DNA of 64,000 bases from Haliotis rubra (Eukaryota). The position numbers and the translations under genes are program-made. The notes under the pieces are model-generated. The model had not been told where the DNA came from, did no database searches, and saw nothing but the letters and a program-made list of their open reading frames with translations. Below are positions 43,333 to 64,000 of this stretch, piece after piece. Positions within the stretch are counted from its first letter, which is position 1. The number at the start of each line of letters is the position of its first letter. The stretch is taken from positions 682,001-746,000 of the forward strand of contig NW_025766836.1 in the NCBI RefSeq assembly GCF_003918875.1. The letters are read 5' to 3'.

Positions 43333-43749
43333 GGTGAGGTGAAATGGGGTTTAACGTCCAACTTGAGAATATTTCACTCATATGAGTGAGTGAGTTTAGT
43401 TTTACGCCGCTTTTAGCAAATTCCAGCAATATCACGGCGGGGGACACCAGAAATGGGCATCACTCTCATATGACGGCGTGCATGCGTGTATGTGCGGCTG
43501 CTTGTACTAGCCCAGACTGAAGCTGGTTTTATAGTGCTAGCTCACCGAGATACCATGCTGCAGTGAAGCATGAATACCCCACTCAGACACAGTATAACGA
43601 CCAGTCCTTGTACCCATATATGCAGAACGCCAGGCAGGGACCAACAAGTACCACATTTTGATGTCTTTTGGTATGACGCGGCCGGGGGTCGAACCCACGA
43701 GCTTCCACTCTCCGGGCGGACGCTCTAACCCCTACACCACGGAGGCGGT
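43333..43749 (-). mobile_element. SINE family B copy with a nested 5'-truncated family A copy (about 43383-43460)
   Basis: cactcatatga / ctctcatatga duplication around the nested tail. Confidence 0.85.
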
Positions 43750-45181
43750 TGTGGGAACCAGTGACCGGCTTCATCTATTCCAATAAATCTGCCTTACAAG
43801 TGGGTTATAACCAAAAATTGTCCACAAAACTCATGTCTCACTAAAAGCACTGCCCACAGATGGTAAGTGGGGATGTTGCAATTCTGTATCGGCAATGAGT
43901 AACACCAGAAAACATGGAATTAATACATAGGCAGATCCAGTGAATCATAATATGCCACCTGCTGCAACGTATGTGTTAAATGCCGTTTTGGAATAAGCTC
44001 CCAAACTTTCGAAGTAGTTAGGCTTAAGTGACTGCCATTGTACCAAACCCATGGAGATCCTGGTTAGAATTATTGTTCAGGAACCCATACTTGACGGAAG
44101 AGGCAACTAACAGGATTGGGTGGTCAGTCTGGCTGACTTGGTTGATTCATGAAATTGTATCCCAATTGTGTTGATCGATGATCATACTGTTGATCACTAC
44201 ATTGTCCGGTCCAGACTATTTACCGACCCCTGCTATACAGCTGGAATGTTGTAGACTATTGCATTAAACAACCAACAAACAATTGTACACTGAATGCAAG
44301 AGATGTTGTTCATGATACCAACTGCTGAACTGTCTTATTAGTCTACAGATAGGTGCCAAAAGGCTGGAATGCTGGCCAGGAAGACTAAACATTGCACTCT
44401 GCAATATTCCTGCCATACGACAGTCTGAAAATATTGCACAAGTCAGGGCCAGATAAACCAATACTTGACATCATATCTTATCAAAGTAATGGATCCTGTA
44501 TTTTCATGTATTGAGAAAGATAGGGTGACATTCAGTTCCAGCCTTTTATGTGATTGCATTCCAGCCATGCTGTTGGAGTGTTCTCGATGTACTTAAGTTA
44601 ATCGAGTGAAAAACAACATAAAAATATAGATTTTAAGAAATCTGCATCCTTTATTTAATACAAACAAGACAAACATAAAACATCATCAGGGTGTAATTAT
44701 CTTTAAAAATACTGTTGTGATAAGAAACTGAAGAACATTATGGTCCTGAAAAGCAACATTCAAGATGAGTGAGAGTAATGTGCCAAGTTTAGGGAAGTGG
44801 GAAAGGAAACAAGATGATCAACTGAAATGAGTCAAGAAATGGCTTTTGGATATTAGACTCAAACATTGTAAACAGGAAAACTTACCCATTGAATTATCCC
44901 ACGATTAACAAATTTCCTCTCGCGCTGGCAGTTCCTGTCTAACTTACCGTTAACTTAATCCTAATTGAATTGAGTTGTGTAACATCCCTTTAGCTTCCAG
45001 ATTCCATCCAAACGATTTTTATTGTGATCCTCCAATCTTCTGTGATTTATATCTTCATTCAATCCTGTTTCGTTCAGTTATGCATCATTGCTAAATTCAG
45101 ACATGCTCTCCCAGTGACAAATATCAGTGAAAGAGCACATATCTGATATGAACAAAGGTACATAATTAGAACTAATCTTAC

Positions 45182-46044
45182 CGCTTTCCTCCTGGCAGAT
45201 GTTCCAAGAATTATAGTTCGATATCCTCTGCGCGAATCCTGATCCTATCCTTACATTTCGGTCTCCAAACTCTGTCCTTTCCTCTAATGTTCCTATGCTC
45301 CCAGTCTCCTTCCCTCTCATTAATAATCCTCATGCTGTCTGTTCCTATCCTTCCTTAAATTTTATCCAAAATCCATCCAGTCCACGGCAAAAATATCCTA
45401 TGAAAGGATGGTAATGAAATCCAGTGAGATTTCAGAGCCTTCATCTTATCCAGATCCTCTTAAAACTATGATGAAAACAGGATATCTGTTAAAAGGATAT
45501 CGTTTAGAATCCTACGATGGACATGGGCCTCAAATTTTTACTGTGGGTTTCCGTTTTCCTCCTGAAATCCACAGTGAATTCCTCATGGGTCCCTTGAGTT
45601 ATCCACAGAGTATCCTCCTATTCTTTGATTCCAGAATACTTGAAATCAAGATTCCCAAATATGACCTAGATAATGGAAATCCTGATTTCATGTAATTTGA
45701 TACTTTCAAAATCAGATTTTCAGGCAAGATTCCAGAGGCTTAAAATCCTGTCTAAACCATGATTCAAATGTCCTGAAAGATGGATGCCAATTTTTAGTTC
45801 TATTTCCTTGACCGTGTTATTCAAAATCCGGATTATTTTCCCAAACTGAGGGAAAATCCTATGTTCCAAAGCGAATTCCTACAGATATCCAGATTTTGAT
45901 ATCCTGATATCCTAATGAGCCGTGGGGAGGATCCTAAAGAGCCATTTCTATGTATCCTGTTTCCTCTCCTAATGAAATGCTAATCCTTCCCTTTGATCCG
46001 CGGATCCTACTCTCTCCAACGTAGTCAATGCATTATGTTTCCAA
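45182..46044 (-). other. Candidate GGA-rich non-coding 3'UTR exon of SRSF1/9 (a second one at 46496-46639)
   Basis: ccttttccttttgttcag acceptor and GCG|GTAAGA donor. Strong GGA enrichment on the sense strand. Confidence 0.5.
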
Positions 46045-46851
46045 CTGAACAAAAGGAAAAGGACAACACATATTAGCACAGGAAAAAAACAGTTCATGAA
46101 ATTACTTTTCACAACACATAATCAGTTAAAAGTCTCTCTGGGCAAAGCAATTTGGCAATAGCCCCAGAGCTTGTACATTAGCTGAGTAGAAAATTATGCT
46201 GCAGCCTTAAGTCATTCCAACATAATTCAATTCAGGATAAATTTGGGTAGGCCATGATTGCTTCAAAATGTTTCACCTTACAAACTTGTGATGTGCTTCA
46301 GTGTCAATTTCAAACCAAACAATGTTTAGACCTTTTTCTCAAGAGAACTAGAACATGAGTGGACCATCACCATGCTTGAGAAATAGCTAAAAAGATATAA
46401 AATATTCATGCACAAAACACAGTTGGTGGCGGTAAAGCAGTTATAGTAGCTCAAAGTAAACCAGAGCATGGTCATTAGCAGTCATAAAAGCATACCATGC
46501 CTATTTTCTCCATGAGTCCTATCCAAAGTTCATAACTCTAGCTGCTGTCACTAGGAGAGGCTCGAGTTGTCTCCCCTAGGCCATCGTTCACATGACTACA
46601 GCATTTTTGTTTGTTAGCCTCCTAGTTCCTATTCAGCATCTGGAGAAGGAGAGATAAAAATATCAAGAATTGGACATTTAAAATGAGTTTGGCATTACAT
46701 CAAGGTTCTGATCAATTTTTGGGGGCTAATTTGGAGGGCAAAAATGCTGATGATGCTATACATACAAACATAAATTGGATGAAATGATACATCATTGTGT
46801 GGCTATGTCAACAGTTTTATCATTGTGAATGGGTTAATGAGAAGCCATAGC

Positions 46852-47022
46852 TCAGTATGGGGAGCGTGACCTCGACCGTCCACGGGAATACGAACTTGAT
46901 CTGGATCGCATTGGGGAGTAGCGGGGGCTGCCCCGGGATTGTCTTCGTGGTGAGAAGCTTGGGCTTCGACTACGAGACTTTCCACGGGAATCCTGCTTCA
47001 CACGGATGTAGCTTGCTTCACC
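46852..47022 (-). CDS. SRSF1: SRSF1/9 exon 4, RS domain (244 aa total)
   Basis: GEASYIRVKQDSRGKSRSRSPSFSPRRQSRGSPRYSPMRSRSSSYSRGRSRSRSPY*. Confidence 0.93.
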   Translation of the reverse strand, partial: GEASYIRVKQDSRGKSRSRSPSFSPRRQSRGSPRYSPMRSRSSSYSRGRSRSRSPY

Positions 47023-47324
47023 CTGCAAATCATGTGGAAAAGAGTTACTGCATGTTGTTTCACTTTATGGTCAGCAATATTCTAATGATAAAAAACAGCA
47101 ACATGATGCACAAGATAATTTGTTAGCTTGCACTGGTTTGGTAACATTCTCCGTTAGATTCAACTGGTTCATTTCAGATCAAGTTGATTGCAACATAACA
47201 GGTTGAAAGAATAAACCATATGAGCTATATTATTACTAATTTGAAGCTGCATCACATTACACTGACTGGTATGTCATGGGCAATTACAAATATTCAAATT
47301 TGTGAGATTTTCTACTGGTCTTAC

Positions 47325-47497
47325 CTCATGGGAGCGGAACTTTGAGTCATCTAGTTTTCTTACAGCATATTTCATGTCTTCCTTACGGAGAAACTCAACT
47401 ACCCCTGTGCCATCTTTGAAGACATCAGCATAGCATACATCACCAGCCTCTCTCATGTGGTCCTTCAAGTCCTGCCAGCTACCAGTAGGAGGCAAAC
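47325..47497 (-). CDS. SRSF1: SRSF1/9 exon 3
   Basis: [26 protein letters not shown] pseudo-RRM (SWQDLKD). Confidence 0.95.
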
Positions 47498-47666
47498 CTG
47501 GACAGTAAAATATTTTTGACTGAGGCACTATTTATTCAACTTATTTGTAAGAATAATCTCAACCTTCAATGATTTATTTATATGATTGATTTATTCATTA
47601 TATGACAGATTCAGAGGACAATAAAATGTTGAAAGTTTCACAAAAACTGCATGGGTGCTTTCTTAC

Positions 47667-47881
47667 CAGACACTAGAACTCTGTATTCTGATCTCCTTGA
47701 TGGAGGTCCACCTCGCCTCCTTCCTCCGCCACCATCACCACGACCTCCACCACCGCCGCCACCCCCAGGGCCAATTCCACCCCTGCTCTGTCCTGGTCCT
47801 GTGCCTCTAGGAAATTCCACCCTCAGTGTGTAGCCGTCATAGTTATACCCATCTCTTTGCTGTACAGCATCTTCTGCATCT
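47667..47881 (-). CDS. SRSF1: SRSF1/9 exon 2
   Basis: [24 protein letters not shown], Gly-rich hinge, [13 protein letters not shown]. Splice phases are consistent. Confidence 0.95.
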
Positions 47882-48723
47882 CTGGCAACAGAAGTTAGAC
47901 ATGTGATTATCCCATAGGAACAGGTTTAGTCAAAATTAAACCCTTTTGTTGGATTAGGAGACTGTCTTGGCCTGTAAAATTAATGGCCTGTAGAGGTTGG
48001 GTCAAATTAATTACAATGTAGCCAAAATTACCAGTCCTTTCGAAGTTCAGAAAGAAACTTGAGAATTCAACCGAGGGGATTGGTAGGCAGCAATTCTTTT
48101 TTTCTAGAAATGGCTATATAAATATTGTTACACGAACAACAGATGGGCTAGAACTCTGAAGCTTTATAGAAAGACAAAAGGCACTGCACTACAGCAAGTT
48201 CATGAATGCGTGTGAATATTCCCTGAAAAATAATTACCTACTCAATGAAACAAATCAAATTTTGAGTCAACGAACTTTTCTTTTTAACCACTACAGAGTA
48301 CGATAACGAAACGAATGTGCATAATTCCTACGTATACCCAGAAGTTTGTCACAGTACGATAAATTGTTCTGCAAATTATGTTCTGTTTACGTAGCAAAGT
48401 GATACACATGCAGAACAAAAGGAAACAGCTTAGACACGTCATCGTGATATATGTAATAGCTAACAAGCAGGGCACATACAACATTTCCGCCACAGAGCTC
48501 AATGAAAATATTCCAGTGTTAATAATACATACCGCATAGTTAATTGTAAGGAAAATATTTACACGAAGACCAAGGCACCACTGTGTAGAGTTTTATGAAA
48601 TTCCTTTTGAACATAGCATTGAAATCAAATGATAAACATGATAAAAGGACAAACAATAAATTGGGCCAATAAATCATACAAAGGTAAACTTTGGGAACAC
48701 TAATTTACCAGTGAAATAACTAC

Positions 48724-48899
48724 CTGGGATCGTCGAACTCGACGAACGCAAAAGGAGGACCTCGTCTGTTTTTCAGGTCGATGAAAACGATTTTACCATA
48801 TTTATAAAACAAATCTTCGATATCACGTGTTCTGATATCTGGTGGCAGGTTTCCAACGTAAATTCTGCTATCATTAGGAATACCACCCCTGTATGCCAT
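48724..48899 (-). CDS. SRSF1: Serine/arginine-rich splicing factor 1/9 (ASF/SF2), exon 1
   Basis: [24 protein letters not shown]...[12 protein letters not shown] (RRM1). Likely co-orthologue of vertebrate SRSF1 and SRSF9. Confidence 0.95.
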
Positions 48900-49384
48900 G
48901 ATCAACTATCTGTGTTTCTCCTCGACCTCTCCTGTTCTAATATGGCCGTCCACGCGTCGTTTTCGCACTGAATTGTGGGATAGTAAAGGCATTCGGGACC
49001 AACTCGAGTTATTCCGAGACAGGCCGAATAGCAAGTAGCGGAAAGTGGCGAATGGCGAAGAAAGACGTGCGTTCGTGCGCGCTGTAAACAACATTTTACT
49101 GGAAACACGTCGAGGAAATGTTCCTGGTGTACTAAGTCCACGAACTTTGGGGATGGAATATATGCGGCTCCAATTTCCACTAATCCCATCCAAAACCAAA
49201 CAACGATCACCCTAAATTAGTTTAAAAAGCAAAACAAAAACACCAATCATTTCAAATAATGTAAGCCCAATATAAGGACGATTATTGTTATTGAGACATT
49301 ATTGAGAATGAAGAAGAGATTATGAAATCTCGGGCGTCACACTTCAGTAAGGTGGTTAGAAAACAACCGAGCTATGTGGACTTG

Positions 49385-49993
49385 TGAGCGAGTGAGTTTA
49401 GTTTTACGCCGCAATCAGCAATATTGCAGCTATATGGCGGCGGTCTGTAAATAATCGAGTTTGGACCAGACAATCCAGTGATCAACTGTATAAGCATCGG
49501 TCTACGCAGTTGGGATACGATGACATGTGTGAACCAAGTCAGCGAGCCTGACCATCCGATGTCGTTAGTCGCCTCTTACGACAAGCATCGGCTACTGAGG
49601 TGAGGTGAAATTTGGTTTATCGTCGTGCTTGAGAATATTTCGCTCATATGACGACGTGCATGCGTGTGTATGTGTATGTGCGTCTGCTTGTACTAGCCCA
49701 GACTGAAGCTGGTTTTATAGTGCTAGCCCACTGAGATACCATGCCGCAGTGAAGCATGGATACCCCACTCAGACACATTATACTGACTCCGAGCCGACCA
49801 GTCCTTTTTGTACCCATTAAGTCCGAGCGCCAGGCAGGGACCAACAAGTACCATATTTTAACGTCTTTTGGTATGACGCGGTCGGGGATCGAACCCGCGT
49901 CCTTCCGCTCTCCGGGCGGACGCTCTAACCACTACACCACGGAGGCGGTTCATCGGCTACTGAAGATCAATTCTAACCCGGATCTTCACGGGT
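49385..49993 (-). mobile_element. SINE family C (Nin/Deu-like core catgcttgtcgtaagaggcgactaa) interrupted by family B (49599-49950). Other C copies at about 20425-20633, 20690-20865, 22830-23066, 23400-23815, 44047-44280 and 59386-59533
   Basis: 13-bp TSD catcggctactga around B. C shares its 3' tail with family A. Confidence 0.85.
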
Positions 49994-51926
49994 ATGTGGA
50001 CTAGAGGTTGAAAGCATGAGCAGAACGATTCCGTGGGTGTTTATAAGACGTCGGGCTCCGACAAGCCCAGACTAACATCTAGTCTCAGAAATGAACATAT
50101 TTACAGCAAAGAGCAGTACATAAATGTTAATAAAATACAATGAAAAGAAGCCCTTCATTTTCAGAGAAACTGTGGTAACCTAGATTTGCCACATATTCTA
50201 GACTTGCATGGGCTTTCTTGGATATATTTGTTTCGGGGCCTGTAAGACAGACTACGACAAACAACGTGGGCTCGTGACACTAACATTTGCTGCTAATCAC
50301 TACGTTAAAAGAGAAGGTACTGTGCTGTATTTAACTGGAACACAAGTGGAGAAAGAACGAACCGCATGTCCTCTCGATATCCTGTAGTCTGTCTCACAGT
50401 CCCTGAACCGCATTACTTCCCCTACTGCCTAGCCAGCCATGCAGTGCAAAAGATCTTAATGAAGCAAGTCTAGATTTCCCCAGGTTCTGAATCACCCATC
50501 TCACTGGGGTTCCTTTTCAATCTAAATGTGATTATTTGTTACTATCAGAATTATATATATTAAGAGCCTAAGCCTAAGTCTAGTCATCCTGTTGATATTT
50601 TTAGAATTCGGTGATAGGGCCAAACTTGTTCCTGTTATCTGGTTCTGATATATGTGCTCATAGACGTGACAGGTTTGGGAATGTGGGTCCAGTTAAGTTA
50701 ACTGACTGCTTGGGCAGGCTATTCACAGCTATAGGAGCCCCCAGAATCTCTTTAAGCAAATATATCTAGACCTGGGCAAACTATTGTCGACTTGCTTCTG
50801 AGATTCAGATATCTATTGATTATTTCAAAATTATATCTAAAGGATCATTTGAATTTGTTTTTATGCTTTAAAGCATTTTATTTCTGACTTTCCAGATTTC
50901 CAGACTTTCCTGATTTCCAGATCAAGAAATACAAGAAATTATATATCCTCCAATCTTTCTCTCTTTTTTTTAATATGTGACTACATTATATAGTGCAGGA
51001 GCCTCAATAATGTTACAGTACATATCACAGCAACAATAAACAGCTACTGCACCGAAAACGAATCAATATAATATTTGTGAGTGATCTCCCTTCGATCAAC
51101 GCCATCCCGACGGTCTCCCTTTTGGTTTTTTTACACAATCGGAACATACCAGTAAAATATTATGCTGCGAATATATTTTCGAATAAAATGCAAATACTGT
51201 CTGACACTACCCAAACATAGAGACAGGACAAACTGGCTCTGTAAATAAAGACGGACAATATATAAGCGATCCTTGGGATGCTTATTTTTAATGAAATACA
51301 GACCTGAAATCGTGACTGTTCTTTTTAAAAGAGGAAAAAATATCATCATTGCGTGCGTGATCCAGCATACTTGCCTAAAGAGTTTTATAAGGCATCGACA
51401 CGGTCATGACAGATTATAGTGACTCAATAATGTGGACACAGCGGAACACTCCCATCTCTGGTTGTTTACTTATATATACTTGAATAGAATCATAAAGGTG
51501 TACTTGCCATGCCCATTTTGATTTATAATGAGAGAGTGAGTGAGTTTAGTTTTACGCCGCACTCAGCAATATTCCAGCTATATATTCGGCTCCAATTTCC
51601 AACAATCCCTTCCAAACCCAAAACAACAATAATCTTAAATTAAGCCAGACCAATTTTATTTCTTGTTTTACGAATTCGCCTGTCGTATTTTTTCAAGAAT
51701 TAATAAAAATAAAAATTAAGTTTCCCCGCTCAAAAAATAAAATCCTGATGTTTTTATGGGCCAAAAATGTAAACTTACAAGAAAATTGGTTTTAGATTGT
51801 TTTTTGCCCCATATACACTTCATAAATTGCCAAAAGTAAAATACTTTGAGTATTTAGAAGGACTATTACTCTGACTGGTGAATTTTTTATATTTTTTCCC
51901 TCCTGCCTTTAGGTTTTCTGAGGACA

Positions 51927-52741
51927 CCCCACTGCGGGTCAGAAAATCGATAAACTAGGCCCCGGTTTAGTATCAACACCCCCTACTATATAATACATAA
52001 AGGTTCATCACAGAAATACGGTGACATGATCGAAAACCGGACAATTACGCACATGTCAATGAATATATCGTATTTTAAAGGTCTCACAAGTATCAAAAGC
52101 TTTTGTCCATATCTCCGATGTATGTAGGAGGCATATACATGCGCTTTCCGTGGGGATGCATTTGATGGGTTTTATTAAATCGCCAAAGACCGAGTTGCTG
52201 TGCCGGAAGTGTACAAAACTAGGTCGTCAGCGCAATCAAATTGGTTAATAAAATGACAACAAATGCACGTGCGAAAATGAGAGGGAAACTCAAACGTCTA
52301 TCATCCAAGATGTCACTATCTGATGTTTTATCTTGGTAAGAATAATTTTAAAAACGAGTACAAATATTTTTAAAGAAACACATTCATTCAGTGTAATGTG
52401 TTAGCCAATCAGATCGCCGGAGGTAGTGAAGTCAAGCGCTGACGAGCTAGTTTTGTATACTTCCGGCACAGCAACTCGGTCTTTGGCGATTTAATAAAAC
52501 CATCAAATGCATCCCCACGGAAAGCCCATGTATATGCCTCCTACATACATCGGAGATATGGACAAAAGCTTTTGATACTTGTGAGACCTTTAAAATACGA
52601 TATATTCATTGACATGTGCGTAATTGTCCGGTTTTCGATCATGTCACCGTATTTCTGTGATGAACCTTTATGTATTATATAGTAGGGGGTGTTGATACTA
52701 AACCGGGGCCTAGTTTATCGATTTTCTGACCCGCAGTGGGG
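51927..52741. mobile_element. Large fold-back element, about 305-bp near-perfect arms with an about 200-bp spacer
   Basis: 51927-52233 is the reverse complement of 52436-52741. Confidence 0.88.
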
Positions 52742-59534: not shown

Positions 59535-62500
59535 GTGTTCCCATCCACCTTCACCTGGTCCCAACACCTCTCCAACCCGTGTGTTCCCACCCTTCTTCAC
59601 CCGGTCCCAACACCTCCCCAACCCGTGTGTTTCCACCCACCCTCGCCTGGCCCTGATTTCTCGAAACAAACTTAAGTTTGTACTCAAATTTTAAACTAAG
59701 TTTGACAATTTGAAACAGCTGAATTTTTATCTAAGCTGCATTTATAAAATAAAAAAAACCAAACAACTTAAGTAATCTATCTCCCAAACTCAAATTGTCT
59801 ACTATGTTTGGGTTTGATATCGATTTCAGTTCATTCTGGGAAATGCATTTCCCTCCGTTTTCTCAAATTTGAGTCAAAACTCTAACTTAAGTCAAACTCT
59901 GACTTAAGTTTGTTCCGGAAATCGGGGCCTGGTCCCAACACCTCCCCAACCCGCGTGTTTCCATCCACCTTCACCTGGTCCCAACACCTCCCCAACCGGT
60001 GTGTTTCCACCCACCTTCACCTGGTCCCAACACCTCCCCAACCCGTGTGTATCCACCCACCTTCACCTGGTCCCAACACCTCCCAAACCCGTGTGTATCC
60101 AACCACCTTCACCTGGTCCCAACACCTCCCCAACCAGTGTGTTTCCACCCACCTTCACCTGGTCCCAACACCTCCCCAACCCGTGTGATTCCATCCACCT
60201 TCACCGTTACCAACACCTCCCCAACCCGTGTGATTCCACCCACCTTCACCTGGTCCCAACACCTCCCCAACCCGTGTGTTTCTACCCACCTTCACCTGGT
60301 CCCAACACCTCCCCAACCGGTGTGTTTCTACCCACCTTCACCTGGTCCCAACACCTCCCCAACCCGTGTGTTTCTACCCACCTTCACCTGGTCCCAACAC
60401 CTCCCCAACCGGTGTGTTTCTACCCACCTTCACCTGGTCCCAACACCTCCCCAACCCGTGTGTTTCCACCCACCGTCACCTGGTCCCAACCCTTGTGTGT
60501 TTCCATCCACCGTCACCTGGTCCCAACACCTCCAACCCGCGTGTTCCCACCCAACTTCACCTGGTCCCAACACCTCCCCAACCCGTGTGTTTCCACCCAC
60601 CTTAACCTGGTCCCAACCCTTGTGTGTTTCCATCCACCGTCACCTGGTTCCAACACCTCCAACCCGCGTGTTCCCACCCACCTTCAATTGGTCCCAACAC
60701 CTCCCCAACCCGCGTGTTCCCACCCACCTTCAATTGGTCCCAACACCTCCCCAATCCGTGTGTTTCCACCCACATTCACCTGGTCCCAACACCTCCCCAA
60801 CCCGTGTGTTTCCACCCACCTTCACCTGGTCCCAACACCTCCCCAACCGGTGTGTTTCTACCCACCTTCACCTGGTCCCAACACCTCCCCAACCCGTGTG
60901 TTTCTACCCACCTTCACCTGGTCCCAACACCTCCCCAACCCGTGTGTTTCCACCCACCTTAACCTGGTCCCAACCCTTGTGTGTTTCCATCCACCGTCAC
61001 CTGGTCCCAACACCTCCAACCGGCGTGTTCCCACCCACCTTCACCTGGTCCCAACACCTCCCCAACCCGTGTGTTTCCACCCACCTTAACCTGGTCCCAA
61101 CCTTGTGTGTTTCCATCCACCGTCACCTGGTCCCAACACCTCCAACCCGCGTGTTCCCACCCACCTTCAATTGGTCCCAACACCTCCCCAACCCGCGTGT
61201 TCCCACCCACCTTCAATTGGTCCCAACACCTCCCCAATCCGTGTGTTTCCACCCACATTCACCTGGTCCCAACACCTCCCCAACCCGTGTATTCCACCCA
61301 CCTTCACCTGGTCCCAACACCTTCCCAACCCGTGTATTCCACCCACCTTCAATTGGTTCCAACACGTTCCCAACCTGTGTGGATCCACCCACCTTCACCT
61401 GGTCCCAACACCTCCCCAACCAGTGTGTTTCTACCCACCTTCACCTGGTCCCAACACCTCCCCAACCTGTGTTGATCCACCCACCTTCACCTGGTCCCAA
61501 CACCTCCCCAACCCGTGTGTTCCACCCACCCTCAATTGGTCCCAACACCTCCCCAACCTGTGTGGATCCACCCACCTTCACATGGTCCCACACCTCCCCA
61601 ACCCGTGTATTGCAACCACCTTCACATGGTCCCAACACCTCCCCAACCCGAGTGTTTCCACCCACCCTCAATTGGTCCCAACACCTCCCCAACCTGTGTG
61701 GATCCACCCACCTTCACCTGGTCCCAACACCTCCCCAACCCGTGTGTTTCCACCCACCTTCACCTGGTCCCAACACCTCCCCAACCCGTGTGTTTCCACC
61801 CACCTTCACCTGGTCCCAACACCTCCCCAACCCGTGTATTCCACCAACCCTCAATTGGTCCCAACACCTCCCCAACCTGTGTGGATCCACCCACCTTCAC
61901 CTGGTCCCAACACCTCCCCAACCCGTGTGTTTCCACCCACTTCACATGGTCCCAACACCTCCCCAACCCGTGTGTTTCCATCCACCTTCACCTGGTCCCA
62001 ACACCTCCCCAACCCGTGTGTTTCCACCCACCTTCACATGGTCCCAACACCTCCCCAACCCATGTGTTTCCATCCACCTTCACATGGTCCCAACACCTCC
62101 CCGACCCGTGTGTTGCCATCCACCTTCACCTGGTCCCAACCTGTGTGGATCCACCCACCTTCACCTGGTCCCAACACCTCCCCAACCAGTGTGTTTCCAC
62201 CCACCTTCACCTGGTCCCAACACCTCCCCAACCCATGTGTTTCCATCCACCTTCACCTGGTCCCAACACCTCCCCAACCCGTGTGTTTCCATCCACCTTC
62301 ACCTGGTCCCAACACCTCCCCAACCCGTGTGTTTCCATCCACCGTCACCTGGTCCCAACACCTCCCCAACCCGTGTGATTCCACCCACCTTCACATGGTC
62401 CCAACACCTCCCCAACCCGTGTGTTCCCACCCACCTTCACCTGGTCCCAACACCTCCCCAACCCGTGTATTCCCACCCACCTTCACCTGGTCCCAACCCG

Positions 62501-62985
62501 TGTGTTTCCATCCACCTTCACCTGGTCCCAACACCTCCCCAACCCGTGTGTTTCCATCCACCTTCACCTGGTCCCAACACCTCCCCAACCCGTGTGTTTC
62601 CACCCACCTTCACCTGGTCCCAACACCTTCCCAACCCGTGTATTCCACCCACCTTCACCTGGTCCCAACACCTTCCCAACCCGTGTGTTTCCATCCACCT
62701 TCACCTGGTCCCAACACCTCCCCATCCCGTGTGTTTCCACCCACCTTCACCTGGTCCCAACACCTCCCCAACCTGTGTGGATCCACCCACCTTCACCTGG
62801 TCCCAACACCTTCCCAACCCGTGTGTTTCCACCCACCTTCACCTGGTCCCAACACCTCCCCAGCCCGTGTGTTTCCACCCATCTTCACCTGGTCCCAACA
62901 CCTTCCCAACCCGTTTGTTTCCATCCACCTTCACCTGGTCCCAACACCTCCCCAACCCGTGTGTTTCCATCCACCTTCACCTGGT
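59535..62985. repeat. 47-bp C-rich tandem satellite (about 65-70 units)
   Basis: Unit ccaccttcacctggtcccaacacctccccaacccgtgtgtttccacc. Confidence 0.97.
59650..59928. mobile_element. Harbinger-like MITE inserted in the satellite
   Basis: TIRs as at 42677, CTG TSD inside a satellite unit. Confidence 0.8.
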
Positions 62986-64000
62986 CGGATGATATGCAAG
63001 TGAATTCACATGGATTGAGTTAACTCCAAGGATCGATGTGACAGCCTCAGTTACCCACGGGAGGTTCGCATTGGCGTATTATCCAGCACATCCATTAGTA
63101 TCGACAACACGATGTTTCAAGCACCTGTTACGGCAATACAGTGAATTGTTGAATGGGTGAATGTAATATGCATGATCCATGCATCTCTGGATCAATTTAT
63201 ATACGGGACGGTTGAGTTGCCTAGATGTAACAGGGTGCGTGTCACGCCGATAACCTTGGAGTCCTATTATTGGGTGCATTATGTAACCTGTGTCTGGTGT
63301 GCTCTAATGTATTATTGCCGGATGTTGCTTGAAGCGACTTAACACCATATCAACATGGATCTACACTGTTCACTGAGACTCTCGTTCCTTGAGAATGAGT
63401 ACGGTGGTGTAGCCTCACACAAATTCCCAATTTTGAAAGAAAAGAAAATGTGGAGGTTACACAATTAGTTTGAAATCAGAGAATAATTGATGTATAGGAG
63501 GGTTAGTGGGGTAGCCTAGTTTATAAAGCATTTGTCGTCGCAACGAACACCCAGGTTCTATATTCCCACATGGGTACAACGTGTGAAGCCCATTTCTGGT
63601 GTTCCTCCGCCGTGAATGTGCTGGAATATTGCTAAAAGCGGCGTAAAACTACTCTCACTCACTCACTCCTTGAGAATAACGTAGGCTTACAATAGTATAA
63701 GCATCGCATATTTCATACCGATTTTCCAGGCGCCAATATTTCCAACAGATTTTGCCCAGGGTGCCGTTGCAAATTACGATCGAAGCGCTAAGATGATCGT
63801 AACTCAGACAGAACAAGACAGACTTACGAATGCGTGAGTGAGTTTAGTTTTACGCTGCTATTAGCAATATTCCAGTGATATCACGGCGTGGGACACCAGA
63901 AATGGGCTTCACACATTGTACCCATGTGGGGAATCGAACCCGGTCTTCGGCGTGACGAGCGAACGTTTAACCACTAGGCTAAACCACCGCGCGCACACTG

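What the first reader, a model, noticed from the sequence alone, without database searches (positions are those of the whole stretch)
44650..46852. GGA-packed non-coding exons downstream of the SRSF1/9 stop codon: candidate autoregulatory splicing-NMD sensor
Seen: after the stop at 46852 the minus strand has strong acceptors (tttttatctccttctccag at 46640, ccttttccttttgttcag at 46045, weaker ones near 44822 and 44745) and donors (ATG|GTATGC 46496, GCG|GTAAGA 45182, ACG|GTAAGT about 44947, TGG|GTAAGT about 44886), with AATAAA near 44650. The 863-nt segment 46044-45182 has no long ORF and is not a tandem repeat, yet it is full of GGA: a hand count gives about 22 in the last about 207 nt, against 2-3 expected from base composition. 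Established: the SWQDLKD pseudo-RRM of SRSF1 binds GGA, and mammalian SRSF1 autoregulates through 3'UTR splicing coupled to NMD. Inference: these exons form an array of the protein's own binding sites, so that high SRSF levels create junctions more than 50 nt past the stop and destroy or retain the mRNA.
Basis: partly seen in the sequence, partly recalled or inferred. Interest (0 to 1): 0.72.

Follow-up and report, generated by a model that had tools for sequence, protein, structure and literature searches.

The report
Abalone SRSF1 3′UTR self-binding GGA array
The abalone gene for splicing factor SRSF1 carries, in its long 3′ untranslated region, a strongly conserved 860-base cluster of about 60 GGA motifs (the motif this protein binds) just after an optionally spliced intron; this looks like the invertebrate counterpart of the known mammalian SRSF1 self-regulation module, and similar clusters sit behind SRSF1 genes in many animal phyla.

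Summary
On the minus strand, 46044-45182 holds 61 GGA in 863 nt. Background 863-nt windows hold 9.9 ± 3.5 (maximum 25). The segment is not a tandem or dispersed repeat, and every quoted splice-site string and the AATAAA are present.

- **Transcript:** contigs from Haliotis (abalone) RNA runs splice the three coding introns but run unbroken from 47021 to 44629. The main mRNA therefore has one 2.2-kb 3′UTR, not a chain of non-coding exons.
- **Splicing:** in a sister species, a contig joins 46496 directly to 44044's neighbour 46044. This removes exactly the predicted GT-AG intron 46495-46045, 356 nt past the stop. The other predicted junctions have no support.
- **Selection:** against a relative's genomic contig, intron 3 differs at 25.5% of sites and the 3′UTR at 6-11%. 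GGA positions changed 2/183 versus 61/680 for other positions in the block (p = 4e-5).
- **Other phyla:** strand-specific GGA blocks lie 0.2-1.5 kb 3′ of the stop in SRSF1-type genes of oyster, chiton, brachiopod, nemertean, ostracod, probably nematode, and sheep.

The best reading is the mollusc version of the known SRSF1 module: a retained 3′UTR intron plus self-binding sites. Protein binding, NMD sensitivity and dosage response are untested.

The parts
48724..48899 (-). SRSF1 coding exon 1 (ATG at 48899; N-terminal part of RRM1)
   Evidence: Spliced ORF. RNA contig junction 48724|47881. Pfam RRM_1 E=3.9e-13.
47667..47881 (-). Coding exon 2 (end of RRM1 plus the Gly-rich linker)
   Evidence: junctions 47881|48724 and 47667|47497.
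47325..47497 (-). Coding exon 3 (pseudo-RRM with SWQDLKD)
   Evidence: Pfam RRM_1 E=9e-12.
46852..47022 (-). Coding exon 4 (RS domain), with the stop TGA at 46854-46852
   Evidence: Differs from L001 at 4.7% of sites.
46496..46851 (-). Proximal 3′UTR (356 nt), ending at the donor ATG|GTATGC
   Evidence: Covered without a break by RNA contigs. 6.4% substitutions versus L001.
46045..46495 (-). 3′UTR intron (451 nt, GT-AG, GGA-poor). It is retained in the dominant mRNA and spliced out in a congener.
   Evidence: Organism A contigs (X1, X4) run through it. In organism C (X7), unspliced contigs coexist with a contig that ends at 46045 and continues with the letters of 46496-46512. It holds 1 GGA in 451 nt. 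Donor and acceptor strings are identical in L001.
45182..46044 (-). GGA array: 61 GGA in 863 nt, consensus (A/U)GGA(U/A), typically (U)AGGAU
   Evidence: z about 14. 59/61 GGA are retained in L001. GGA positions changed 2/183 versus 61/680 for other positions, p=4.4e-5. AGG and GGA are the best-conserved trinucleotides. No excess RNA structure (z -0.67).
44629..45181 (-). Distal 3′UTR. It carries four further consensus-like splice-site strings without RNA support and the poly(A) signal AATAAA at 44655-44650. Transcript contigs end at 44629/44630.
   Evidence: 9.4% substitutions versus L001.

Best explanation
The region is the 2.2-kb 3′UTR of an abalone (Haliotis) SRSF1 ortholog. It contains the invertebrate counterpart of the mammalian SRSF1 negative-feedback module.

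Shown here:
- The productive, dominant mRNA keeps a 451-nt intron (46495-46045) inside its 3′UTR.
- Directly downstream of that intron's acceptor lies an 863-nt array of about 60 (A/U)GGA(U/A) motifs.
- The intron can be removed, as seen in a congener, which places a junction 356 nt after the stop.
- The GGA motifs are under strong purifying selection.
- Equivalent arrays occur 3′ of SRSF1-type genes across bilaterian phyla.

Inferred:
- GGA is the motif bound by the SWQDLKD pseudo-RRM of SRSF1. When SRSF1 is abundant it would occupy the array, which would then act as a very large exonic enhancer for the weak donor and strong acceptor pair and promote intron removal.
- The spliced mRNA would be unproductive, through NMD triggered by the exon junction far downstream of the stop, or through nuclear retention or translational effects. 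SRSF1 output would fall.
For: Gene identity:
- 244-aa, 4-exon ORF containing SWQDLKD.
- 98.4% identical to Haliotis cracherodii 'serine/arginine-rich splicing factor 1A-like'.
- RRM_1 hits on the exons.

Transcript structure:
- RNA contigs in two organism-A runs skip the three coding introns at GT-AG sites but run unbroken from 47021 to 44629, about 20 nt past the AATAAA.

Alternative splicing:
- In organism C, unspliced contigs cross both splice sites.
- A further contig joins 46044 to 46496: its loose end matches 46496-46512 with one extra T, and this is the only match in the window.

Motif array:
- 61 GGA versus 9.9 ± 3.5 in background windows; consensus (U)AGGAU.

Selection (versus genomic contig L001):
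- Substitutions per aligned site: intron 3, 0.255; 3′UTR parts, 0.064-0.108; block, 0.071.
- GGA positions 2/183 changed versus 61/680 for others. G inside GGA 1/122 versus G outside 16/86.
- AGG and GGA are the most conserved of 28 trinucleotides; flanking positions -1 and +3 are at least 97% conserved.

Deep recurrence:
- In 12 of 13 SRSF1-type genes, the densest GGA window within 3 kb 3′ of the stop exceeds every background window on both strands of its locus.
- The sources are Haliotis, two bivalves, a chiton, Lingula, Lineus, Cyprideis, Steinernema, one unidentified taxon and sheep.
- The sequences do not align outside close relatives.
- A pyrimidine tract plus (a/c)ag lies directly 5′ of the block in most.

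Known biology:
- The pseudo-RRM binds GGA (PMC7813835).
- Human isoform 1 retains a 3′UTR intron and is the productive form, and SRSF1 promotes the unproductive splicing (PMC9262138).
- The human CLIP site in SRSF1's own pre-mRNA lies next to that retained intron, and overexpression increases its splicing (PMC2556390).
Against: - No 3′UTR junction appears in the contigs of the window's own species. Contigs drop rare variants, so this is weak negative evidence.
- The spliced form in the congener rests on one junction-bearing contig plus graph break points. Its abundance cannot be read from contigs.
- The cytosine preference of SRSF1 RRM1 at -4/+6 from GGA (PMC7813835) is absent: pooled 13% and 16% C against 15.5% block composition, over 376 sites.
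- Other pseudo-RRM SR proteins also bind GGA, and UAGG resembles hnRNP A-type sites, so the binder is not identified.
- EJC-dependent NMD is not established in molluscs and is weak or absent in flies and worms.
- Oyster cDNA contigs read straight through the equivalent acceptor, and their spliced 3′UTR intron lies only 14 nt past the stop.
- One divergent Lineus paralog lacks a block.
Confidence: 0.6

Rival explanations
1. The GGA array is a conserved platform for a different RNA-binding protein. Candidates are another pseudo-RRM SR protein of the SRSF4/5/6 (B52) type, or an hnRNP A-type protein that reads UAGG. It would then mediate cross-regulation of SRSF1 rather than autoregulation.
For: - TAGG is enriched (13 versus 1.9 expected), and UAGGAU is the top hexamer in abalone.
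- There is no RRM1-type cytosine signature at -4/+6.
- GGA recognition is a property of the pseudo-RRM class, not of SRSF1 alone (own knowledge, from the Cléry 2013 work cited in PMC7813835).
Against: - The array follows SRSF1-type genes across phyla.
- The universal part of the motif is WGGAU/A, while TAGG is prominent only in abalone and chiton.
- In humans the protein itself crosslinks next to the retained intron and drives its splicing (PMC2556390).
Confidence: 0.2
2. The array acts in the cytoplasm on the unspliced mRNA, controlling translation, stability or localisation through bound SRSF1 or another protein. The occasional removal of the 3′UTR intron would then be a minor, non-regulatory event.
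For: - The dominant mRNA keeps the array and the intron.
- The whole 2.2-kb 3′UTR, not only the block, is 2.5-4 times more conserved than intron 3.
- Human SRSF1 is also bound to its own mRNA in the cytoplasm and is autoregulated at translation (PMC2556390; PMC4379411 citing Sun 2010).
Against: - The block starts exactly at a strong acceptor in abalone and at similar Y-tract/AG motifs in most other lineages.
- The GGA-free interval upstream behaves as an intron.
- This reading does not exclude the splicing model; both layers coexist in mammals.
Confidence: 0.15
3. The GGA richness is a neutral compositional quirk, a degenerate repeat or a dispersed element with no function.
For: None beyond the general purine richness of the segment (57% A+G).
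Against: - No tandem or dispersed repeat structure.
- The region is collinear with single-copy orthology in L001.
- Purifying selection acts on GGA specifically.
- The feature recurs in about nine independent lineages.
Confidence: 0.02

Closest known systems
Mammalian SRSF1 (SF2/ASF) autoregulation through its conserved 3′UTR: retained-intron productive isoform versus 3′UTR-spliced unproductive isoforms (Lareau 2007 and Sun 2010 as cited in PMC4379411 and PMC9262138; Sanford 2008, PMC2556390)
   Same: - The gene is orthologous.
- The productive major mRNA retains an intron in the 3′UTR.
- That intron can be spliced, giving a junction far (>50 nt) downstream of the stop.
- Motifs bound by the protein sit next to the retained intron.
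- The 3′UTR is unusually conserved.
- The sheep locus shows GGA(U) patches at +400-500 and +1400-1800, the latter right after a Y-tract/AAG motif.
   Different: - The abalone array is far larger (61 GGA over 863 nt, against 17 over 168 nt in the densest sheep patch).
- Conservation is of motif density, not of an alignable ultraconserved sequence.
- Binding, NMD sensitivity and dosage response are shown only in mammals.
- NMD rules in molluscs are unknown.
Poison-cassette-exon autoregulation of other SR genes (SRSF3, SRSF4/5/6, SRSF7, TRA2B; PMC4379411, PMC11791180)
   Same: Negative feedback by unproductive splicing of the factor's own pre-mRNA, with clusters of the factor's own binding motif in the regulated exon.
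   Different: Those use an internal cassette exon that introduces a premature stop codon. Here the coding region is untouched and the event lies entirely in the 3′UTR. The block is not seen as a cassette exon in any contig.
SRSF1 pseudo-RRM/GGA recognition (Cléry et al., PMC7813835)
   Same: The core GGA is invariant and selected. The WGGAU context equals the UGGAU context of the RNAs used for the tandem-RRM NMR work. SWQDLKD is present in the abalone protein.
   Different: The RRM1 cytosine at -4/+6 is not enriched around the sites.

Membership tests
SRSF1-type 3′UTR unproductive-splicing autoregulatory module | The host gene encodes an SRSF1/SF2 ortholog (RRM, Gly linker, SWQDLKD pseudo-RRM, RS tail) | tested here: met
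   (98.4% identical to Haliotis cracherodii SRSF1A-like).
SRSF1-type 3′UTR unproductive-splicing autoregulatory module | The dominant, productive mRNA retains an intron within the 3′UTR | tested here: met
   Contigs in X1, X4 and X7 are spliced at the coding introns but continuous across 46495-46045.
SRSF1-type 3′UTR unproductive-splicing autoregulatory module | That intron is alternatively removed, giving an exon junction more than 50-55 nt downstream of the stop | tested here: inconclusive
   The junction 46496|46044 (356 nt past the stop) is present in organism C (X7) beside unspliced contigs. It is not seen in contigs of the window's own species, where rare forms are dropped. Raw reads were not available.
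SRSF1-type 3′UTR unproductive-splicing autoregulatory module | Binding sites for the protein itself lie adjacent to the regulated intron | tested here: inconclusive
   Motif level: 61 selected (A/U)GGA(U/A) sites start at the acceptor. The RRM1 cytosine signature is absent. Physical binding cannot be tested with these tools.
SRSF1-type 3′UTR unproductive-splicing autoregulatory module | The 3′UTR is unusually conserved | tested here: met
   0.064-0.108 substitutions per site, against 0.255 plus many indels in intron 3, versus L001.
SRSF1-type 3′UTR unproductive-splicing autoregulatory module | The spliced isoform is stabilised when NMD is inhibited | not testable with these tools
   Needs UPF1/SMG knock-down or translation-inhibitor RNA-seq in Haliotis.
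SRSF1-type 3′UTR unproductive-splicing autoregulatory module | The isoform ratio responds to SRSF1 dosage | not testable with these tools
   Needs a minigene or overexpression experiment.
Poison cassette exon of SR genes | An alternative internal exon that introduces a premature stop codon and is flanked by used splice sites on both sides | tested here: not met
   The block lies after the normal stop. No contig shows use of the 45182 donor or any downstream acceptor.

The most novel reading that the evidence does not exclude
The pairing of a retained 3′UTR intron with a dense array of the protein's own GGA(U) motif may be a bilaterian-ancestral SRSF1 homeostat. It would have been maintained for over 500 million years by turnover of motifs (conserved density and position, not alignable sequence). 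Arrays of 20-90 sites would act as a cooperative, concentration-counting sensor. Lophotrochozoans and an ostracod carry much larger arrays than the sheep locus examined.
Probability: 0.4. Interest if true: 0.7.

Novelty: new member of a known kind. Interest (0 to 1): 0.55.

Why it matters
SR-protein homeostasis by unproductive splicing is a textbook case, but for SRSF1 it has been worked out only in mammals. There the cis-code is hidden inside an ultraconserved block where every base is conserved, so functional motifs cannot be told from passengers.

The abalone locus and its relatives are diverged enough to expose what selection actually protects. GGA sites changed at about 1%, against about 9% for the spacers between them.

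The same motif-dense block recurs behind SRSF1 genes in phyla whose 3′UTRs no longer align. This gives a concrete and testable candidate for the sensor element, an estimate of its age, and a simple genomic signature for finding such feedback modules in unannotated genomes. It also raises a testable question: do 3′UTR junctions trigger NMD in lophotrochozoans?

Tried and rejected
- **Tandem repeat:** TRF finds only a 17-nt trifle. Direct and inverted repeats are short chance families.
- **Second GGA-rich zone:** the zone at 59.9-63 kb is an unrelated 46-nt minisatellite with 68 copies.
- **Structured RNA:** no Rfam family in 43500-50500. The block's folding energy is ordinary (z -0.67).
- **RRM1 cytosine signature at -4/+6:** not enriched.
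- **Word search from exon pieces:** no stop-free reference longer than 95 aa exists. I therefore used the single representative search with the RRM2 exon to obtain protein ids.
- **Look-ups that gave nothing:** P0206 (Patella) is not on record. L005 (990 nt) is too short and was not analysed.
- **Papers:** Sun et al. 2010 (PMC2921916) is not held, so I cite it only through PMC9262138 and PMC4379411.
- **Earlier findings:** searching by words returned nothing.
- **tRNA-like upstream element:** ARAGORN finds no tRNA.
- **Depth values:** contig depths were not used to estimate isoform ratios, as the tool warns against it.
- **Sheep locus L004:** vertebrate SRSF1 3′UTRs are ultraconserved and so close to human sequence. 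I made only local counts and edge prints in scripts and sent none of its letters to any search tool.
Full report
**1. What is in the sequence**

Read on the minus strand, the window carries a four-exon gene: 48899-48724, 47881-47667, 47497-47325 and 47022-46852. All introns are GT-AG. The 244-aa product has RRM1, a Gly-rich linker, a pseudo-RRM with SWQDLKD and an RS tail. Both RRM exons hit Pfam RRM_1.

The product is 98.4% identical to the Haliotis cracherodii protein named 'serine/arginine-rich splicing factor 1A-like'.

**2.

- **Count:** the minus strand of 46044-45182 has 61 GGA in 863 nt, and 22 in the last 207 nt.
- **Expectation:** 13.5 from window trinucleotide usage, 16.6 from base composition, and 34 from the segment's own dinucleotides.
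- **Background:** 2,236 other 863-nt windows on both strands give 9.9 ± 3.5, with a maximum of 25.
- **Boundaries:** density is 7.07 per 100 nt in the block, 0.22 in the 451 nt immediately upstream and 2.5 downstream.
- **Strand:** the complementary TCC occurs only 11 times.
- **Motif:** the extended form is (A/U)GGA(U/A). AGGAT occurs 19 times against 0.6 expected, and TAGGAT 7 against 0.1.
- **Repeats and structure:** no tandem repeat, only trivial direct repeats, no Rfam family and no excess secondary structure (z -0.67).
- **Other GGA-rich zone:** the zone at 59.9-63 kb is a 46-nt minisatellite with 68 copies and is unrelated.

**3. What the RNA shows**

Transcriptome-sized Logan assemblies hold the stretch. 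I laid four of them on 44300-49100.

In two runs of the window's species (X1, X4), a single contig of 2.8-3.0 kb skips the three coding introns at the expected GT-AG borders, so it is RNA. It then runs without interruption from 47021 to 44629, ending about 20 nt after the AATAAA at 44655-44650. The dominant mRNA therefore has one unspliced 2.2-kb 3′UTR.

In a sister species (X7, about 4% diverged throughout), contigs again cross the region unspliced. The assembly breaks exactly at 46045 and at about 46496-46514. One contig that ends at 46045 continues with 17 letters that match 46496-46512 with one extra T. This is the only such match in the whole window.

The junction lies 356 nt past the stop.

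No contig supports the acceptor at 46639, the donors at 45182, 44948 or 44886, or the acceptors at 44821 or 44745. Contigs drop rare variants and cannot give isoform ratios. The absence of the junction in X1 and X4 is therefore weak evidence, and the abundance of the spliced form is unknown.

**4. Selection**

Using the RRM2 exon as the query, I obtained ids of exon-ORF fragments and fetched their contigs. L001 is a 2,980-nt genomic contig from a relative. It aligns collinearly to 47513-44655.

| Region | Substitutions per aligned site |
|---|---|
| Exon 3 | 0.040 |
| Intron 3 | 0.255 (plus 64 gap columns) |
| Exon 4 coding | 0.047 |
| Proximal UTR | 0.064 |
| 3′UTR intron | 0.108 |
| GGA block | 0.071 |
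| Distal UTR | 0.094 |

The whole 3′UTR is 2.5-4 times more constrained than a neighbouring intron. The optional intron is its least constrained part.

- Inside the block, positions within GGA changed 2 of 183 times, against 61 of 680 for other positions (Fisher p = 4.4e-5).
- G inside GGA changed 1/122, and G outside GGA 16/86.
- 59 of 61 GGA are retained, and L001 has 63 in all.
- Among 28 trinucleotides with at least 12 occurrences, AGG (0.976) and GGA (0.967) are the best conserved, against a mean of 0.81. Flanking positions -1 and +3 are at least 97% conserved.
- All eight splice-site strings are also intact in L001. At about 92% overall identity this is only mildly informative.

**5. The same feature in other phyla**

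I fetched SRSF1-type loci from the following sources:

- a bivalve-like metagenome contig (L002);
- Crassostrea (L009, L010, and cDNA contigs L011-L013);
- the chiton Liolophura (L014);
- the brachiopod Lingula (L015);
- the nemertean Lineus (L006);
- the ostracod Cyprideis (L003);
- the nematode Steinernema (L007);
- one unidentified assembly (L008);
- sheep (L004).

Outside close relatives the 3′UTRs do not align. Even so, in 12 of 13 genes the densest GGA window (300 nt) within 3 kb after the stop exceeds every background window on both strands of its locus. The z values are 4.8-10.7. Blocks start 0.2-1.5 kb after the stop, hold 17-91 GGA at 6.5-10 per 100 nt, and are strand-specific.

GGA is the most enriched trinucleotide in each block. 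This test is partly circular, because the blocks were delimited by GGA clustering.

The pooled consensus over 376 sites is W-GGA-U/A, with U 50% and A 25% at +3.

In most lineages a pyrimidine tract plus (a/c)ag sits directly 5′ of the block. L002 also has a donor AATG|GTATGC about 200 nt after its stop, followed by a GGA-free interval of about 310 nt. This mirrors the abalone layout.

Caveats:
- The paralog pairs in L008 and in Lingula have near-identical profiles and are not independent.
- The Steinernema patch has an 86-aa stop-free frame and could be coding.
- One divergent Lineus paralog lacks a block.
- None of the non-abalone acceptors is RNA-verified.
- Oyster cDNA contigs from three runs read through the equivalent acceptor. 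They splice a different 102-nt 3′UTR intron whose junction is only 14 nt past the stop.
- For sheep I made only local counts and sent nothing to search tools.

**6. Mechanism**

Established knowledge:
- The SRSF1 pseudo-RRM recognises GGA through its alpha-1 helix, and several GGA raise affinity (PMC7813835).
- Human SRSF1 isoform 1 retains a 3′UTR intron and is the productive form, and SRSF1 drives splicing to unproductive isoforms (PMC9262138).
- The CLIP site of SF2/ASF in its own pre-mRNA lies next to that retained intron, and overexpression increases its splicing (PMC2556390).

The abalone anatomy fits this. A weak donor (ATG|GTATGC, 6.1 bits on a crude matrix) and a strong acceptor flank a GGA-free intron. 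The downstream 'exon' begins with a very large array of the protein's own motif, which is what an SRSF1-dependent exonic enhancer would look like.

- **Shown:** the array, its selection, intron retention in the main mRNA, intron removal in a congener, and recurrence across phyla.
- **Inferred:** that SRSF1 is the binder, that binding promotes intron removal, and that the spliced form is degraded or otherwise unproductive.

The NMD step is the weakest link. EJC-dependent NMD is not documented in molluscs and is weak in flies and worms (own knowledge).

The RRM1 cytosine signature at -4/+6 is absent. This keeps open a different GGA reader: another pseudo-RRM SR protein, or in abalone and chiton an hnRNP A-type UAGG reader. 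It also keeps open a purely cytoplasmic role.

**7. Comparison and novelty**

This is a member of a known kind of system, SRSF1 negative feedback through its 3′UTR. Three of five testable defining features are met, two are inconclusive, and two further features cannot be tested here.

It is not a poison cassette exon, because the coding region is untouched and no contig uses the block as a cassette.

I found no paper that describes the GGA array as such. I also found none that traces the SRSF1 3′UTR mode outside vertebrates; Lareau & Brenner 2015 (PMC4379411) traced SRSF4/5/6. My search covers only open literature, so prior description cannot be excluded.

A human isoform-1-specific primer printed in PMC9262138 reads, in reverse complement, as a run of GGAU/GGGA motifs. 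This suggests that the mammalian retained intron carries such motifs too.

**8. Verdict**

| Refutation criterion | Result |
|---|---|
| Transcripts end before 46640 | No. They reach 44629. |
| Splice sites are unused | One pair is used in a congener. The rest have no support. |
| Segment is a dispersed repeat | No. |
| Isoform ratios do not respond to NMD or dosage | Untested. |

The added value of this follow-up has three parts. The transcript model is corrected to a single long 3′UTR with one optional intron. There is direct evidence of purifying selection on the GGA sites. And the array recurs, without alignable sequence, behind SRSF1 genes across Bilateria.

Noticed in passing
window 59928-62986: A 46-nt minisatellite with about 68 copies at 88% match. 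It is C-rich on the + strand (GC skew -0.6) and causes the second 'GGA on minus strand' peak. It is unrelated to the SRSF1 3′UTR.
   Followed up: partly
Two vertebrate hits (P0085, P0100) are chimeric SRSF1-LC8 gene models. Together these suggest an ancient SRSF1-DYNLL microsynteny.
   Followed up: partly
window 52170-52500: Two inverted arms of about 55 nt (gttttattaaatcgccaaagaccgagttgctgtgccggaagt... and its reverse complement) enclose about 220 nt. This looks like a miniature inverted-repeat transposable element upstream of the SRSF1 promoter.
   Followed up: no
window 49380-49990 and 51540-51600: A tRNA-like stretch (ggtgtagtggttagagcg...gggttcgatcccc) and a repeated tail (attgctga.tgcggcgtaaaactaaactcactc, present twice) suggest SINE copies between the SRSF1 start and the upstream region. 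ARAGORN calls no tRNA there.
   Followed up: partly
L010 7436-7537 (Crassostrea): Three independent oyster RNA contigs splice a 102-nt intron whose junction is only 14 nt after the SRSF1 stop codon. That is too close to the stop to mark the mRNA for EJC-type NMD. It is a different 3′UTR intron from the abalone one.
   Followed up: partly
L007 9156-9378 (Steinernema carpocapsae): A GGA-dense segment of about 220 nt (AGGAG/AGGAC type) lies 195 nt after the stop of the SF2 ortholog. It is flanked by tgatttcag| and |gtatat and comes after an AATAAA. It could be a 3′UTR cassette exon, or part of a Gly/Arg-rich coding exon (86-aa stop-free frame).
   Followed up: no
L003 38238-38453, L004 27971-28159: The deposited gene models of Cyprideis (P0070) and sheep (P0067) skip the true RS-domain exon (found at L003 38584-38760 and L004 11534-11728). 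They attach an unrelated C-terminus instead, which is a mis-annotation of the last exon.
   Followed up: partly
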